Numbered from the stretch's first letter, positions 6,001-15,000 are shown. The stretch: 64,000 bases of DNA from Ostrea edulis (GCF_947568905.1 NC_079164.1:45012001-45076000); one strand, 5' to 3'. Numbers and translations are program-made. Notes: generated from the letters alone by a model not told the origin.

Positions 6001-9000
6001 TCGAAATGCACCCGTGACAGTAGGCCTAGTTGTCAATGATACATAATCGTATCATAATTTAGGTCTATCTAACTTCTCCAAAAATAAATTTAATAATAAT
6101 TGCACTGTTTATTTTAGAAAAGCAACAACGCTAATTACAGTTGTTTACAGAAATGGCATTACTAAATTGTGTTTAGACAGTGATCCCATGTAAACGTTAT
6201 TTACTCGCAAATGCAGATTTCATACTCGCTTTCCTCGCTACATTTGGGTCGCTATTTGTATGCACTGGTGGCTAAAAGATATAAGACTGGGGAAATTTGT
6301 CAACATCGAAATAAATGTTATCCATGGTAAATAAATTAGGCCCCTAAAACCCAAGTTTTTAAAAATATCTAACACTACTTTTACAACAAGTTGATCGACG
6401 AAGGTCGCATATGACGTCACTGTACCACGTGACTACCTATCTAATTAACTAGGCTTTTTGAAATCGGGGCTTAGATTTAAGTCCGTATTGTGGCTAATTA
6501 TCGCAATACTTCAGCGAACGAACTATTACAATTAATTTCTATAAGCATAAGGAAGACAAAATGCATATAATTCTGCATACTTTGAAAACACGGGATGTGT
6601 CCTTTAATAGGGCATTATTTTTCTTAGGTTTTGACTCCATACTTCAGGCCCCAGGGATACATTGACCATGAAATTCAGTTTTAGTTCCCCTTACTCCAAA
6701 GATATTCGATACCATAGTTGATGAAAATGTCCAGTGGCATGTACTTGCAGAGTTCTTTATGTTCAAATGTTAATGCATGATGAATGTCGACAAACACCTA
6801 CCGGATGATTAAAAAAGCGGGACAAACAAAAGAACATACACACAAACAAATATAAACCAAAATATATTTTTTCCTTCAGAGTGTGAGTAAAATTATCTCA
6901 TTCTTTCAATTCTAAAGCAAACAATATATGGTAAAACATTTTACATGTCAAATTCAAGACCTGGTAGTTTTTTCTCCCTACCTGCTTTATCTCCCTGTAT
7001 TATGTTGACTGGAGAGGCTGTAATGTTGGACGTACTGCCCACACCATTCTCTGACCTCAGTGACACGTAATACACTGGCCTATTCAGAGCCTGGTCAGTC
7101 AGGGACAGGGTCAGACCATCTATGTAATAGCTGTTTACAAGGCCAACTGATTTCCAATTAAGAACATCAGTTCCTCCTACAAAACAAATTCTGCTCCATT
7201 AACACGAAGATCGAGACAACTGTGTATCCTTATCGTGAGTAACATTTATTTTAAGGATGTGTATATCTTATTACCAGTATTTACAAAATTGGAAACCAGC
7301 TAAAATGAAATAGAAAAGGGTCAGAATATGACCTGGAGTGGTTCCTACTGCCAGATGATAACTAACTAGTCCTGACTGATGGTCATCCACATCCCAGGCT
7401 GTCATAATTCCCTGTCTGTCGGATTGATACACATAGCCATTGACCAATTCCTCTGCAATTTCTGCCATCACCCCAACTCTCAACCAATGGATCTTCAATC
7501 ATACACATAGTTTAAAACAATTCCACTGTTCCAGCTTGTAGATCACTTTCAGATTTTGAAAAACCACTGACTGCAGTATTAACATTATTTTTCCTGATCT
7601 AAACTGAATATGAATTTTGTAGTGCTTTACAGCTAGGGAATCATCAACTCTGGACAACTTACAATAGGTGGTGTAGTATCAATGATAACTCCGTTGGTCT
7701 CAAAAGAGGACATGTATCCTGCCTTGTTGACTGCTGCCACCCTCATACTGTACAGAGCTCCCTGTCTAAGAGAGAGTCCTGTCCAGCTGTAGCTGGTCAA
7801 GAGACTGTTTACTATAGTGTTCCATGTAAAAGTAGCTAAAAAACAAAATTTTGACAAACGTAATATAGATTATTGAGATGGATATGAGATAATCTCATTT
7901 AATTGAGTGAATAGCATTATACAATAGGACTTAACTTGGTACAAGCTAACTTATTTTAAGAAAGTCAGCATCAGGAGGAGTTAACTAGTATTGCAACTTC
8001 CTCTTCCTTTTTGCACCCCACTCAAGTGGAAGGAACAACAGCACGTTAAGCACTTTTTCACAATCAAGGCCAATCCATGCCTCCAAAGAGAAAAAGAGAT
8101 GGGGGAATGGTTTCTCCAGCCCGGGGCAGAGGACAAAAAAAGTCTCGCCACAACACTAGGCAGCAAAAGCCTGGAACTAAAGTGAGAGATAACCAACCCC
8201 CCTTCCAGCACCAGGAATCTTCAGAGAGCGTGCCAGGGAGTGAGGCTGCACCAGATTTGGGGGAGTTTGTGCCTGCCAACTTTGGCAATATTGGTAACTC
8301 TGATTTTTCTTTAGATTTAAATGTTGCTGACTTCACCCCTGTACCAGAACTTAGCTACTTTGATAATGTAGGTCAACACATCCCTTTGAAACTGAAGCAA
8401 AAAATTTGGGATGGGCAATTTGTTGATTTAGGTTTGCTGTTAAAATCAGCAAAAGAGATTGACTATAGTTTGGGGGGTCAAGGCGAAATTAAAATCAGGG
8501 ATGGAAAATTCTGCGTTGTCAGGTCTAATGATAGTTCATACCTGACAATTGATAAATGGACTAATGCCTTCATGATTTACATGAGCGTTATGTTGGAAAA
8601 ATACAGAGCTCGGGCCCAGGAGTTTTTAAAATACATGCGAGATATCAGATTAGCTGCCACTAGATCCCAAGGCTGGTACAAATACGACGAGCAATACCGT
8701 CTCCGCAAAGCTAGCAATCCTGAATCCTCCTGGGGCATTATCAGTCAGGAATTTTGGCTACTATATGTGACCGGCCAGAGTTCATTCCATAGTCAAACTC
8801 AATTCAGTAATAATAAGCAATTTTCAAGTCAGAGCAGCACATCTGCTGTTACCCAATACTGCTATCATTTCAATCAGGGTAAAAAGTGTAATTTCTTCCC
8901 AAAATGCAGGTTCAAGCACACCTGTAGGAGATGCGGAGGAAAACATCCAGCCAACAACTGTTCTTCCAACTCAGCTGTATAAATTGGGCAAGACCCCTAT

Positions 9001-12000: not shown

Positions 12001-15000
12001 GAAATCAAGCTTACTTAAATAACATACAGGGTGGTTTGGAATTTATTTTGGGGGGAAAGGGCAAAATCTTCCCTACGCAATAGTTTGCAGAATCTTGTCA
12101 CTTGTGGTTGGTTCCTATAACCTGTCATTCATTTAGGAGATAGATACTCTCTAGAGCAATTGGTGGGGAACATCATATCGATGTTTGTGGCGGGGTCAAG
12201 GGAGACATCATCCCTGTACAAGCTTAACCTGTTGTCTCTGCCCATCTGCATCAAAGCATGAGGGATGTCTCATGGCTGTGTGTTAACATGGAAGTTAAAT
12301 GCCATTGAGCAAATGTGTGGAATAACTGGAAACTGCTTGGGGTCTGCAGCATTTCAGTGCTCAGACCCCCTCTACCTCTATAAAAGGAGGAGAGGCTACA
12401 GGCTGGGTGGTGTGAAAGTTCTAAACCAGGTAGCAAGCCAGAGACAGGGTGTAAAAGCTGTGCAGCTTGTGTGCCTAGCCACCATGCGTGTTAGGCATGG
12501 GGTTCCTTGGCACTCGCATCAAAGCGAGGCCACTAGTTTGCCCATTGGTTTATGGTATCCTAGTTGTCTCCCTTGACTCCTACTAATTTTTGCGGCCAGT
12601 ATCATCCAACACTGGTGTATTGTGTTTTTATGATGTCATTGCTCAATAAATTCATGTAAAGTACCAATTGGTGTTTATTTTTCATTCTCACTAGTGGCTG
12701 AAAGATAATTCAATAATATTGTGAAAAGGCAGACAAAGCAAACTATCTTGGCTGCAATCTTCAATTAATATAGATTATTGAGATGGATATGAGATAATCT
12801 CATTTAATTGAGTGAATAGCATTATACAATAGGACTTAACTTGGTACAAGCTAACTTATTTTAAGAAAGTCAGCATCAGGAGGAGTTAACTAGTATTGCA
12901 ACTTCCTCTTCCTTTTTGCACCCCACTCAAGTGGAAGGAACAACAGCACGTTACCCACCCACCCTCCCCATATTTTGAAAAAGTTAAGTAAACCATCAAT
13001 TTGTTTTACTTTGGTCAAATAATCTGCGCCAAGTATGTTATATTTTTAGGTAAATCGCAGGGCGTGGATTCAGTTAAGCTGAGCCTGTTTTTGTACTTGC
13101 ATAGGACTGCTCATATGACGATAGTTGCACCTTGCTAATTGCCAACCAGTCAACGAAAGAGGACTATTGAATAAATATCCAGATAATTTTTCTTTTCTTA
13201 CATTTGTCGCAATTTTAAGGGGGAGGAGTCAGGGAAACATTAAGGCCAATAAGTGTACAAGCTTAACCTGTTGTCTCTGCCCATCTGCATCAAAGCATGA
13301 GGGATGTCTCATGGCTGTGTGTTAACATGGAAGTTAAATGCCATTGAGCAAATGTGTGGAATAACTGGAAACTGCTTGGGGTCTGCAGCATTTCAGTGCT
13401 CAGACCCCCTCTACCTCTATAAAAGGAGGAGAGGCTACAGGCTGGGTGGTGTGAAAGTTCTAAACCAGGTAGCAAGCCAGAGACAGGGTGTAAAAGCTGT
13501 GCAGCTTGTGTGCCTAGCCACCATGCGTGTTAGGCATGGGGTTCCTTGGCACTCGCATCAAAGCGAGGCCACTAGTTTGCCCATTGGTTTATGGTATCCT
13601 AGTTGTCTCCCTTGACTCCTACTAATTTTTGCGGCCAGTATCATCCAACACTGGTGTATTGTGTTTTTATGATGTCATTGCTCAATAAATTCATGTAAAG
13701 TACCAATTGGTGTTTATTTTTCATTCTCACTAGTGGCTGAAAGATAATTCAATAATATTGTGAAAAGGCAGACAAAGCAAACTATCTTGGCTGCAATCTT
13801 CAATTAATACTATTTGGTAATTATTCATTTGCTGCTCTAGAATGACAAAGTATTTTTTTCAAGTTACCTGGGTAGACCTTCATCCTTGTACCATGGTATA
13901 ACTCGTAGATCTGTATTTGGAACTGCTTGATGCCAGACTCATTATCTTGGAAAGCAAAACTGGCATGAAGCTGATCAGTCTCATCCTATAAAAAAAGAAG
14001 CAAGAATAACATAAGGATTCTGTAAACAAGAGATACATTGTATTACTGGTCTGAGCAGTAAATTACTTCAGTATCATTCAACAAGTATGTAATAACTCTT
14101 TTTCGAAGGTAAAATCAATGCGACTGAGTTAGACCTTGGTGACAAAGTATGTGAAAATACTGTACATATACGTCCTGGGGAGAGTCCTTATAAAATCAGA
14201 CTTTCACTATTGCGATCCTTCTTTTCAAGCCCGAGTTCTACATTTAACAGACAGGGCTTCATGATTCTAGTACACATGGCTTATTGTCAATCATAATTAT
14301 GCAACATTGATTATCTGCTACACATCAAAAAGGGACAAAAGTTCAATTCAACCTGAGGTCAAAACTAAATACTTGACTGATATGTTGGAAAGAAAACTTA
14401 CTGCTCATTAAAAATTACAAGTGGTCCTAAAAACAATACCTCAGCAGTAACAAATTCCTAAACATTCAGCTATTGTGCAGTATACCTGGTACATAATGTC
14501 TGAGCTCCCAAGTCCATCCCACAGGTATGTTAGCTCTGGGGGAGTGAGATCTACCACAAATCCATCTGTTTCCTCAGTTACAGAGTTCAGAGCCCCATTG
14601 GTGACTTTCAGCTCCATCTTTACACGATCTTCATGTTCCAAGTTGAAGTTCAGCCATGTAACACTGGAGGAAGTGTTACTGAATGTGGACCAATCTCTCA
14701 GCAAGTCGTAGCTTGTTCCCAGATTTCTGAAATTTTTAGTACATGTCAGATTGTTAGTTGCACATTATTTGCATTCTGATATTTAAAAGCATTTTCAATT
14801 GAATTTCTAGGAATAAAACAACAATACTATTAATAGTAAATAATTTGATAAGACGGTGAATCAAACTACAGTGTGGTCTTGTAATTCAGATACCAACAAC
14901 CCAGATGCTTCACCTGGACAATTTTTTAGTGGGAACCAGTTTTATTTGGAATTTTGCATCATTATCCCATAAAATTCACTTCCAGAATCTTTATGGCAAA

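What the first reader, a model, noticed from the sequence alone, without database searches (positions are those of the whole stretch)
7861..13809. Intact, very young Ngaro-type YR retrotransposon with four ORFs
Seen: gag, RT/RNase H, YR and SGNH frames have no internal stops and all catalytic motifs are present; A1=A2 (188 bp) and B1=B2 (556 bp) with no mismatch found by eye. Established: the A1..B1A2..B2 split-direct-repeat layout defines Ngaro/PAT-like DIRS elements, which integrate a circular cDNA using the YR. Inference: a recent, possibly active and polymorphic insertion, and a rare complete bivalve model for RT-plus-recombinase transposition.
Basis: partly seen in the sequence, partly recalled or inferred. 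Interest (0 to 1): 0.75.

Follow-up and report, generated by a model that had tools for sequence, protein, structure and literature searches.

The report
Young polymorphic Ngaro retrotransposon in oyster
A 5.9-kb jumping gene of a known type (Ngaro) sits inside a flat-oyster gene, is recent enough that another sequenced oyster haplotype lacks it, and appears to make its enzymes by retrovirus-like RNA splicing.

Summary
A1 equals A2 (188 nt) and B1 equals B2 (556 nt) with no mismatch. The gag, RT/RNase H, tyrosine-recombinase (YR) and SGNH frames are open and carry their catalytic residues. The window is Ostrea edulis chromosome OX387704.1. The element meets every structural Ngaro criterion I could test. 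An RT tree with named references could not be built.

Six more copies on four chromosomes are 99.66-99.97% identical. One differs only in a T-run length. A contig from another sequencing run carries the empty site with a single TAATA. So the insertion is recent, makes no target duplication, and is very probably polymorphic.

Corrections:
- B1 and A2 overlap by 4-5 nt.
- A 300-nt spacer separates A2 from B2.
- The RT/RH and SGNH frames have no ATG.
- "Rare" is wrong. Ngaro makes up 0.44% of this genome, and a Ruditapes element has the same layout.

New here: three RefSeq isoforms are reproduced exactly by one GT donor in gag codon 73 joined to AG acceptors before RT/RH, before YR and in the spacer. 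A conserved in-phase acceptor also precedes SGNH. No RNA data were examined, so the splicing remains an inference.

This is a new member of a known kind.

The parts
7861..13809 (+). Whole Ngaro element, 5949 bp (record OX387704.1, about 45,019,861-45,025,809)
   Evidence: Borders come from the exact repeats, from six other copies with unrelated flanks, and from the empty-site contig L016.
7861..8048 (+). A1 repeat (188 nt). It starts with the junction core TAAT(A).
   Evidence: Identical to A2. Variants seen in other copies occur in both A1 and A2.
8077..8982 (+). gag-like ORF, 301 aa. Residues 1-80 are basic and disordered (PPKRKR). Residues 90-235 form a helical core. A CCCH finger and a CCHC knuckle follow.
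   Evidence: 4831 representative homologues. C262, C271, C277, H281 and C283, C286, H290, C295 are invariant or nearly so. Model core pLDDT is above 90, with no PDB or BFVD match. No Pfam hit.
8294..8295 (+). Shared GT splice donor. The exon ends at 8293, in gag codon 73, phase 1.
   Evidence: Only the GT/AG pairings reproduce RefSeq proteins P0121, P0128 and P0220 exactly. A phase-1 donor sits at the equivalent place in Ruditapes.
8910..10561 (+). RT/RNase H exon. The AG acceptor is at 8908-8909. The frame has no ATG of its own.
   Evidence: Donor 8293 joined to 8910 gives P0121, 622 aa, XP_056006413/XP_056020520, isoform X1. RVT_1 1.9e-15. Nearest solved structure is Ty3 RT 4ol8.
10484..11424 (+). 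Tyrosine recombinase exon. The AG acceptor is at 10482-10483. An internal ATG lies at 10522.
   Evidence: Donor 8293 joined to 10484 gives P0128, 385 aa, isoform X2. Phage_integrase 3e-14 plus a SAM-like N domain. Cre-like catalytic residues are present. C. virginica models use the same acceptor, VGQI....
11457..12083 (+). SGNH hydrolase frame, 208 aa, with no ATG before the catalytic Ser. A candidate acceptor AG lies at 11474-11475, giving an exon from 11476 in phase with the 8293 donor.
   Evidence: Pfam GDSL hits fall below the cut-off. The profile's best PDB hit is 4c1b, the ZfL2-1 LINE ORF1p esterase, at 1.9e-5. AF2 pLDDT 91.4 with an SGNH fold. A YAG|G acceptor in the same phase, 14-17 nt before the Trp codon, occurs in 6 of 6 lineages. 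This acceptor is not annotated and is inferred.
12215..12770 (+). B1 repeat (556 nt). Contains AATAAA at 12645.
   Evidence: Identical to B2. Signals.
12766..12953 (+). A2 repeat (188 nt). It overlaps B1 by TAATA, forming the internal B|A junction.
12954..13253 (+). Unique spacer between A2 and B2. It holds AG acceptor 13048-13049, the tail of isoform X3 (13050-13138) and AATAAA at 13170.
   Evidence: Donor 8293 joined to 13050 gives P0220, 101 aa, XP_056006422/XP_056020522, isoform X3. A spacer is also present in Ruditapes.
13254..13809 (+). B2 repeat (556 nt). It ends with TAAT(A). Contains AATAAA at 13684.
7633..7835 (-). Putative host exon (fn3/HYR-like). Its polypyrimidine-AG acceptor lies 25 nt from the element's left end.
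   Evidence: Open frame and acceptor context. Weak fn3 hits. The locus lies inside a minus-strand gene with a 13,903-aa product. The exon boundary is inferred.

Best explanation
This is one copy of a very recently active Ngaro-type tyrosine-recombinase retrotransposon family of Ostrea edulis. It is inserted antisense in an intron of a giant host gene.

Shown:
- The anatomy is A1-gag-RT/RH-YR-SGNH-B1A2-spacer-B2.
- The domains are intact.
- Near-identical copies lie on other chromosomes.
- An empty allele exists that already carried TAATA.
- No target duplication is made.
- The element ends are hybrids of the element core TAATA and the target.
- Sequence variants are mirrored in both members of each repeat pair.

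Inferred mechanism:
- Unspliced RNA serves as gag mRNA and as the template for reverse transcription.
- One phase-1 donor in gag codon 73 is spliced to alternative acceptors. This yields Gag(1-72)::RT/RH, Gag(1-72)::YR, probably Gag(1-72)::SGNH, and a short spacer isoform.
- Each enzyme thereby gains a start codon and the basic PPKRKR leader, a likely nuclear-import signal.
- Reverse transcription regenerates A and B each from a single template. The internal B1|A2 junction guides joining of the B2 end to the A1 start.
- The Cre-like YR then recombines that junction with a chromosomal (T)AAT(A) site by conservative exchange.
- The SGNH esterase, by analogy with the LINE ORF1p esterase, acts on lipids or membranes during RNP assembly or transport.
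For: Repeats and frames.

Domains.

Host and locus.

Copies.
- The L002 copy has 0 substitutions in 5948 nt.
- The others differ from the window copy at 8-21 aligned positions. These counts include indels, a shared 3-nt AAG insertion and the target-derived end bases.

Repeat-pair concordance: 7 of 8 variable repeat positions are mirrored within a copy.

Ends: the overlap with the core is WIN TAATA, L002 and L003 TAAT, L006 AATA, L007 TAA, L004 AA. No TSD is present.

Empty site: L016 reads right flank, one TAATA, then 14 of 14 nt of the left flank.

Splicing:
- GT-AG pairs reproduce isoforms X1, X2 and X3 exactly.
- The same design is seen in Ruditapes, C. virginica, Saccostrea and M. gigas models.
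- A C>T change at 8286 in L006 and L007 creates a GT 9 nt upstream. It coincides with RefSeq models P0132 and P0133, which are 3 residues shorter at the junction.
- A Mercenaria copy lacks exactly the gag body.
- The SGNH beta-strand 1 lies upstream of any possible ATG.
- An in-phase acceptor before SGNH is conserved in 6 of 6 lineages.

Definitions: PMC9210276, PMC8547959, PMC4157794.
Against: - No RNA data were examined. The splice sites rest on RefSeq models whose evidence I cannot see, on sequence conservation and on logic.
- The SGNH acceptor is not in any O. edulis model. The M. gigas model P0139 reaches SGNH by a different, three-exon path.
- The RT acceptor position is not conserved across the wider gag family. 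The residue after C277 is R or S in only 22 of 62 sequences.
- The YR acceptor lies in a conserved RT/RH motif (LSRSQW), so its conservation is not independent evidence.
- The empty site rests on one short contig, with 14 nt beyond the core. Its run's species could not be checked.
- No RT tree with Ngaro, PAT or DIRS1 references was built.
- Circular versus linear cDNA is unknown. DIRS-1 uses linear ssDNA.
Confidence: 0.85

Rival explanations
1. The element is a young Ngaro, but there is no functional splicing. RT/RH is made from unspliced RNA by +1 frameshifting or termination-reinitiation at the gag stop. YR is made from its own ATG. SGNH is made by non-AUG or internal initiation. The RefSeq introns are annotation artefacts.
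For: - The gag stop (8980-8982) abuts the RT frame, and the frames overlap, as the literature describes for these elements.
- YR has its own ATG at 10522, and a 300-aa RefSeq model exists.
- Many SGNH homologues have Met directly before GSS.
- I saw no RNA data.
Against: - Three isoforms share one canonical GT donor. All acceptors are AG and phase-compatible.
- The 101-aa isoform X3 has no homology that could have prompted it.
- The design recurs in Ruditapes, at 54% RT identity, and in C. virginica.
- An intron-less gagN::RT copy exists in Mercenaria.
- Starting at a Met next to GSS would delete beta-strand 1 of the SGNH fold.
Confidence: 0.2
2. The copy is old. The repeat identity reflects gene conversion between A1/A2 and B1/B2, not recent insertion.
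For: Intra-element conversion is known for LTR-type repeats. Repeat identity alone cannot separate the two explanations.
Against: - A copy on another chromosome has 0 substitutions over the whole 5948 nt, including unique parts.
- An empty-site allele exists.
- All frames are intact.
Confidence: 0.03
3. Assembly artefact: the identical repeats or the whole insertion arise from mis-assembly or polishing across copies.
For: The family is multi-copy and nearly identical, which is a classic source of collapse or mis-joins.
Against: - The copies carry private variants that are mirrored in both repeat members.
- Every copy has its own unique flanks and hybrid ends.
- The filled and empty junctions fit each other to the base.
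Confidence: 0.02
4. It belongs to DIRS1-like or PAT-like elements, not to Ngaro.
For: PAT-like elements also have split direct repeats. Structural features of YR elements are homoplasious (PMC4157794). No RT tree was built.
Against: - There are no inverted terminal repeats.
- There is no room for, and no hit to, a methyltransferase domain between RNase H and YR.
- The internal repeats lie downstream of YR.
- An SGNH ORF follows YR, as in the Xenopus Ngaro DIRS-53_XT.
Confidence: 0.03

Closest known systems
Ngaro elements with a fourth SGNH ORF (Xenopus tropicalis DIRS-53_XT, PMC9210276; the original zebrafish and sea-urchin Ngaro of Goodwin & Poulter 2004, which I could not read)
   Same: - gag, RT/RH, YR and then an SGNH hydrolase ORF.
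- No methyltransferase domain.
- A1 at the 5' end and B1, A2, B2 at the 3' end.
- The repeats are 100% identical in young copies.
   Different: - Repeat sizes differ: A 188 and B 556 here, against 236 and 152.
- A 300-nt unique spacer with a splice acceptor and a poly(A) signal lies between A2 and B2.
- Two frames lack ATG and are joined to a gag leader in RefSeq models. I found no description of such splicing for Ngaro or DIRS.
DIRS-1 of Dictyostelium discoideum
   Same: - RT/RH plus a tyrosine recombinase.
- An internal sequence reproduces the junction of the two ends.
- No DDE integrase.
- A short conserved terminal motif.
   Different: - DIRS-1 has inverted terminal repeats plus an internal complementary region, and a methyltransferase domain.
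- It was shown experimentally to amplify through linear single-stranded cDNA (PMC7192593). Nothing experimental exists for this element.
PAT-like elements (Pat1, Toc, Kangaroo)
   Same: Split direct repeats and a YR.
   Different: PAT elements encode the methyltransferase domain and have a different repeat placement (PMC4157794). Neither applies here.
Esterase domain of ZfL2-1 (CR1/L2-type LINE) ORF1p, PDB 4c1b
   Same: It is the best sequence-profile match among solved structures (1.9e-5). It is an SGNH fold with a Ser-Gly-Asn-His set, and it is encoded by a retrotransposon.
   Different: There it is a domain of the RNA-binding ORF1p of a non-LTR element. Here it is a separate fourth frame downstream of YR. 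The lipid and membrane role is proposed only for ZfL2-1 (PMC3905857).
Cre recombinase of phage P1
   Same: It is the nearest solved relative of the YR (9e-8). The Arg-His-Arg-Trp-Tyr residues align. Exchange appears to be conservative, within a short core and without duplication.
   Different: No clear inverted binding arms surround the core (8-9 of 14). The target needs only 2-5 nt of identity with TAATA.
Subgenomic splicing in retroviruses, foamy-virus pol mRNA and Ty1/copia gag mRNA (PMC5580714)
   Same: One 5' donor with alternative acceptors gives separate mRNAs, while the unspliced RNA is the template.
   Different: Here every product would carry the first 72 Gag residues. The element is a YR retrotransposon. 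RNA evidence was not seen.

Membership tests
Ngaro (YR retrotransposons, order DIRS) | RT/RNase H and tyrosine recombinase on one strand, with YR downstream | tested here: met
   RVT_1 at 8984-10558, Phage_integrase at 10465-11421, both on the + strand.
Ngaro (YR retrotransposons, order DIRS) | No methyltransferase domain | tested here: met
   The RT/RH frame ends at 10561 inside the YR frame. Pfam finds only RVT_1 and RVT_3.
Ngaro (YR retrotransposons, order DIRS) | Split direct repeats A1-[ORFs]-B1A2B2, with the internal repeats downstream of YR | tested here: met
   One deviation: a 300-nt spacer separates A2 from B2. Ruditapes L009 also has one.
Ngaro (YR retrotransposons, order DIRS) | The internal B1|A2 junction equals the junction formed by joining the B2 end to the A1 start | tested here: met
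   The sequence ...CTTCAAT-TAATA-TAGATT... occurs internally, and its two halves occur at the two ends.
Ngaro (YR retrotransposons, order DIRS) | Integration without target-site duplication | tested here: met
   Six copies and the empty site with a single TAATA.
Ngaro (YR retrotransposons, order DIRS) | RT (and YR) cluster with Ngaro reference sequences in a tree | not tested
   No named Ngaro, PAT or DIRS1 reference sequences are reachable with the tools. The nearest relatives all have RT-YR-SGNH order.
DIRS1-like | Inverted terminal repeats plus an internal complementary region | tested here: not met
   The repeat finder reports 0 inverted pairs of 40 nt or more in 6500-15500.
PAT-like | Methyltransferase domain together with split direct repeats | tested here: not met
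   No MT domain.
Tyrosine recombinase (Cre/XerD/lambda Int superfamily) | Catalytic Arg, Lys, His-x-x-Arg, His/Trp and the Tyr nucleophile | tested here: met
   LLRVSEV, HSFRIGRA, GRW and NYIR align with Cre R173, H289/R292, W315 and Y324. The Lys is assigned by eye, in SKTDQ.
SGNH/GDSL hydrolase | Blocks I (GxS), II (G), III (GxND) and V (DxxH), and the flavodoxin-like fold | tested here: met
   G15, S16, S17, G76, S77, N78, D79, D174 and H177 are invariant, and G48 is at least 90% conserved, in 19 sequences. Model pLDDT 91.4. Foldseek matches PAF-AH, Iah1 and GDSL lipases with TM 0.6-0.73. The Pfam score is below the gathering cut-off.
SGNH/GDSL hydrolase | Esterase activity | not testable with these tools
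   This needs an enzyme assay.
Retroviral-type Gag | Capsid (CA) fold and a nucleocapsid zinc knuckle | tested here: inconclusive
   A CCHC knuckle and a CCCH finger are present and conserved. The helical core has no PDB or BFVD match.
Active (currently mobile) element | Insertion polymorphism, identical copies, and transcripts | tested here: inconclusive
   One empty-site contig and one copy with 0 substitutions. Transcription is inferred only from RefSeq isoforms. No de novo event was observed.

The most novel reading that the evidence does not exclude
Bivalve Ngaro elements use a retrovirus-like programme of alternative splicing. A single phase-1 donor in gag codon ~53-73 joins to acceptors in front of RT/RH, YR, SGNH and a 3' spacer. 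Each enzyme is therefore made as a fusion to the basic N-terminal leader of Gag, which supplies the start codon and a nuclear-import signal. Unspliced RNA is the gag mRNA and the template. Copies of spliced RNA are occasionally re-inserted, as the Mercenaria copy suggests. As far as I could find, this would be the first described splicing-based expression strategy in YR retrotransposons. This family would also be the first candidate for a currently mobile Ngaro.
Probability: 0.55. Interest if true: 0.65.

Novelty: new member of a known kind. Interest (0 to 1): 0.55.

Why it matters
Tyrosine-recombinase retrotransposons are the least understood retroelement order. Only DIRS-1 of Dictyostelium has ever been mobilised experimentally, and nothing is known experimentally for Ngaro.

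This family has three useful properties:
- Copies with zero substitutions between them.
- A matching empty allele.
- Intact RT, YR and SGNH.

It is therefore a realistic candidate for catching Ngaro transposition in the act. It would also let one test the repeat-regeneration model, the recombination core and the role of the esterase.

The apparent splicing programme would explain a long-noted oddity of these elements, namely overlapping frames without start codons. It is directly testable with existing oyster RNA-seq.

For oyster genetics, such insertions are segregating structural variants inside genes. This one lies 25 nt from a putative splice acceptor.

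Tried and rejected
- Polymorphism via the host exon ORF: the protein word search found only two 57% hits, and the left-flank ORF is not on record. Only the right-flank ORF worked.
- The species of runs ERR13868501 and SRR25445072 could not be established. The O. edulis WGS paper gives only a BioProject.
- The gag fold search against PDB and BFVD gave nothing below E = 0.4.
- Inverted recombinase-binding arms around the TAAT core reach only 8-9 of 14 matches in oyster and clam, which is not convincing. I dropped the idea.
- Protein-level test of RT-acceptor conservation across 62 gag homologues: the residue after C277 is R or S in only 22. 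The acceptor position is therefore not general.
- A second donor near the gag 3' end, as in C. virginica P0337, is absent here. The codon is GGA, not GGT.
- Goodwin & Poulter 2004 is not held.
- The RT tree with Ngaro, PAT and DIRS1 was not built, because no reference sequences can be fetched.
- The single-sequence PDB search for SGNH was uninformative. The profile search was needed.
- Pfam on eight other window ORFs gave nothing.
- The 103-aa ORF inside B has no family hit and was not pursued.

Full report
OBSERVATION

An exact base-by-base comparison confirms the repeats.
- A1 7861-8048 equals A2 12766-12953 (188 nt).
- B1 12215-12770 equals B2 13254-13809 (556 nt).
- Neither pair has a mismatch, and identity ends abruptly at every border.
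- The repeat finder had reported the same pairs and no inverted repeats.

Four plus-strand frames are open.
- gag: 8077-8982.
- RT/RH: 8771-10561 stop-to-stop.
- YR: 10447-11424.
- SGNH: 11457-12083 stop-to-stop.

Three details were missed by eye.
- B1 and A2 overlap by TAATA, so the element starts and ends with the core of its internal junction.
- A2 and B2 are separated by a unique 300-nt spacer.
- The RT/RH and SGNH frames contain no ATG upstream of their domains. The 'M' printed by the ORF lister is a TTG.

DOMAINS

- RT: RVT_1 scores 1.9e-15. The nearest solved structure is the Ty3 RT, with YLDD aligned.
- RNase H: only a weak RVT_3 match at E 0.016, below the Pfam cut-off. I did not check its catalytic residues one by one.
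- YR: Phage_integrase scores 3e-14, with a SAM-like N domain. The nearest solved protein is Cre, and the equivalents of R173, H289, R292, W315 and Y324 are present.
- SGNH by Pfam: the GDSL families are hit only below their cut-offs.
- SGNH by alignment: a 19-sequence alignment has invariant GSS, GSND and DGxH blocks.
- SGNH by profile: the best solved match is 4c1b, the esterase of the zebrafish ZfL2-1 LINE ORF1p (1.9e-5).
- SGNH by structure: an AlphaFold model (pLDDT 91.4) matches PAF-acetylhydrolase, Iah1 and GDSL lipases with TM 0.6-0.73.
- gag relatives: no Pfam family, but 4831 representative relatives.
- gag anatomy: the N-terminal 80 residues are disordered and basic, and the helical core is confidently folded. 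A CCCH finger and a CCHC knuckle are conserved.
- gag fold: the core matches nothing in PDB or BFVD. 'gag' therefore remains a positional label.

WHERE IT IS

The RT/RH frame is 100% identical to Ostrea edulis RefSeq proteins. The window is GCA_947568905.1 chromosome OX387704.1, from about 45,012,001.

Locus L001 is the same record and therefore also holds the letters under the window's N run (4414-4613). I did not read, print or use them.

The element lies antisense inside a gene with a 13,903-aa product. It sits 25 nt upstream of the polypyrimidine-AG acceptor of a putative fn3/HYR-like exon at 7633-7835. The exon boundary is an inference.

A YOUNG, MULTI-COPY FAMILY

Six further copies were fetched through their RefSeq proteins. 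They lie on chromosomes OX387704, OX387707, OX387708 and OX387709, each with unrelated flanks.
- They are 99.66-99.97% identical to the window copy.
- L002 differs only in a T-run length just after A1 (window about 8054-8058), with 0 substitutions in 5948 nt.
- Two copies carry single-base frameshifts in RT: L003 at window position 9324 and L007 at 9117. The window copy has none.

Where copies differ inside A or B, the change is present in both members of the pair within a copy at 7 of 8 such positions. Examples in L007 are 12298/13337, 12614/13653 and 12755/13794. This is direct sequence evidence that each pair is regenerated from one template at every transposition. It also means that repeat identity measures age.

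Age can be bounded with a Poisson argument. The rate range here is assumed by me; it is not a measured value.
- At 1e-9 to 1e-8 substitutions per site per year, 0 differences in 744 nt of repeats bounds the age at roughly 0.2-2 My.
- At the same rates, 0 differences in 5948 nt between two copies bounds their separation at roughly 25-250 ky.

ENDS, TARGET AND THE EMPTY SITE

The internal junction reads ...CTTCAAT-TAATA-TAGATT.... At the outer ends, the bases shared between element core and flank vary:
- window copy: TAATA
- L002 and L003: TAAT
- L006: AATA
- L007: TAA
- L004: AA

No copy has a target duplication.

A contig from another sequencing run (L016, ERR13868501) matches the right flank at 98.4%. 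It then reads one TAATA followed by 14 of 14 nt of the left flank. This is the empty site, and it already contained TAATA.

The insertion is therefore absent from at least one sequenced haplotype. Integration looks like conservative exchange within a short core shared by element and target, as expected for a Cre-like recombinase.

Two caveats apply. The evidence is one short contig, and I could not verify the species of the run. Its 98-99% identity over about 1 kb of non-coding flank points to O. edulis or a very close relative.

The Ruditapes relative has TTAATA at its junction as well.

EXPRESSION

Three RefSeq isoforms of this locus (LOC125667915 or LOC125683087) are reproduced exactly from the window. 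Each uses one GT donor after 8293 (gag codon 73, phase 1).

| Isoform | Protein | Acceptor AG | Exon starts | Product |
|---|---|---|---|---|
| X1 | P0121, 622 aa | 8908-8909 | 8910 | Gag(1-72)::RT/RH |
| X2 | P0128, 385 aa | 10482-10483 | 10484 | Gag(1-72)::YR |
| X3 | P0220, 101 aa | 13048-13049 | 13050 | Gag(1-72)::spacer tail |

Only the canonical GT/AG pairings among the equivalent offsets are splice-like.

I handed no joined exon sequence to any search tool. Searches used single-frame references or stored protein ids. Scripts only tested which coordinate pairs reproduce stored proteins, and they printed no joined sequence.

The splicing explains the missing ATG of RT/RH. It would also give each enzyme the PPKRKR-rich leader.

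Independent support:
- A Ruditapes philippinarum element (54% RT identity) has the same overall layout, including a spacer. Its RefSeq model also needs a phase-1 GT donor in the gag leader and an AG acceptor in the same part of the zinc-finger region.
- Crassostrea virginica models join gag to the same YR acceptor, VGQI....
- Copies L006 and L007 carry a C>T change at 8286. It creates a GT 9 nt upstream and coincides with their RefSeq models, which are 3 residues shorter at the junction.
- A degraded Mercenaria copy has the gag leader and RT as one continuous ORF, with the gag body missing. That is what a re-inserted spliced RNA would look like.

For SGNH no O. edulis model exists. Three observations still point to a splice.
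- The fold's first beta-strand (residues 9-15 of the frame) lies upstream of any Met.
- A YAG|G acceptor in the same phase sits 14-17 nt before the conserved Trp codon in all six lineages examined. The peptide encoded upstream of it is not conserved.
- The M. gigas model P0139 also reaches SGNH by splicing, though through an extra exon.

I rate RT/RH and YR splicing at about 0.7 and the SGNH acceptor at about 0.45.

I found no description of natural splicing in DIRS or Ngaro elements in three literature searches. The key 2004 paper is not held.

COMPARISON WITH WHAT IS KNOWN

The definitions used are these.
- Ngaro: no methyltransferase domain, split direct repeats A1-[ORFs]-B1A2B2, internal repeats downstream of YR.
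- DIRS1-like: inverted repeats plus an internal complementary region, and a methyltransferase domain.
- PAT-like: split repeats plus a methyltransferase domain.

All structural Ngaro criteria are met, and the DIRS1 and PAT criteria are not. A four-ORF Ngaro with an SGNH ORF after YR is already described in Xenopus (PMC9210276).

Ngaro elements are also already counted in O. edulis, at 0.44% of the genome and about 3150 copies (PMC9679248). So the element is not rare.

DIRS-1 was shown to use linear single-stranded cDNA (PMC7192593).

VERDICT

The finding is real and correctly classified. It is a new member of a known kind. Its added value lies in four things: demonstrable recency (an empty allele and an identical sister copy), clean evidence for repeat regeneration, the integration core, and a probable splicing-based expression strategy that is testable with existing data.

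Noticed in passing
window 7633-7860 (minus strand): The element's left end lies 25 nt upstream of the polypyrimidine-AG acceptor of a putative fn3/HYR-like exon. The exon belongs to a giant minus-strand gene with a 13,903-aa product. The insertion may displace the branch point of that intron.
   Followed up: partly
L004:9786-16778 (O. edulis OX387704.1, second locus): This copy carries three [A-spacer-B] units (A1...B1A2-sp-B2A3-sp-B3), not two. That is a 1040-nt tandem extra unit.
   Followed up: partly
L005:9785-14877: This copy ends 4 nt before the end of A2 and is followed by unrelated sequence. The spacer and B2 are missing.
   Followed up: no
L006:9665-9785 and 15737-15856: This copy sits inside a tandem array with a repeat unit of roughly 40 nt. 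The flanks look duplicated, but that is not a target-site duplication.
   Followed up: partly
L008:7986-9809 (Mercenaria mercenaria JAIXLV010002170.1): The gag leader and RT/RH form one continuous 602-607-aa ORF with no gag body. YR is split into three pieces and SGNH is truncated. It looks like an old re-inserted copy of the spliced RNA.
   Followed up: partly
window 8286 (copies L006, L007): A C>T change creates a GT 9 nt upstream of the usual donor. It coincides with the RefSeq models of those loci (P0132, P0133), which are 3 residues shorter at the junction.
   Followed up: partly
window 32086-47075 versus 49800-63837: A tandem segmental duplication within the host gene region: 11.3 kb at 99.1% identity and 2.8 kb at 97.7%.
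   Followed up: no
window 17035-17729, 39006-39333, 45151-45802, 56711-57038, 61892-62557: Arrays of a satellite-like unit of about 160 nt, with 2-4 copies at 78-87% identity.
   Followed up: no
proteins P0054, P0059, P0067, P0070, P0076: Close RT/RH homologues (48-50% identity) are deposited as proteins of 'Candidatus Thiodiazotropha' and Sedimenticola MAGs. These are most likely clam-host Ngaro DNA binned into symbiont genomes.
   Followed up: no
window 12265-12576 and 13304-13615: A 103-aa ATG ORF lies inside each B repeat. It has no Pfam hit and its significance is unknown.
   Followed up: no
window 7884-7900; L008:7812-7835: A short motif, ATATGAGATAATC(T/C)CATTTAA, containing the palindrome GAGATAATCTC, lies near the start of A in the oyster element. 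It recurs upstream of the Mercenaria copy. It could be a conserved cis element.
   Followed up: no
window 4414-4613: This is the only N run in the window. Locus L001, from the same record, would show its letters. They were not read.
   Followed up: no
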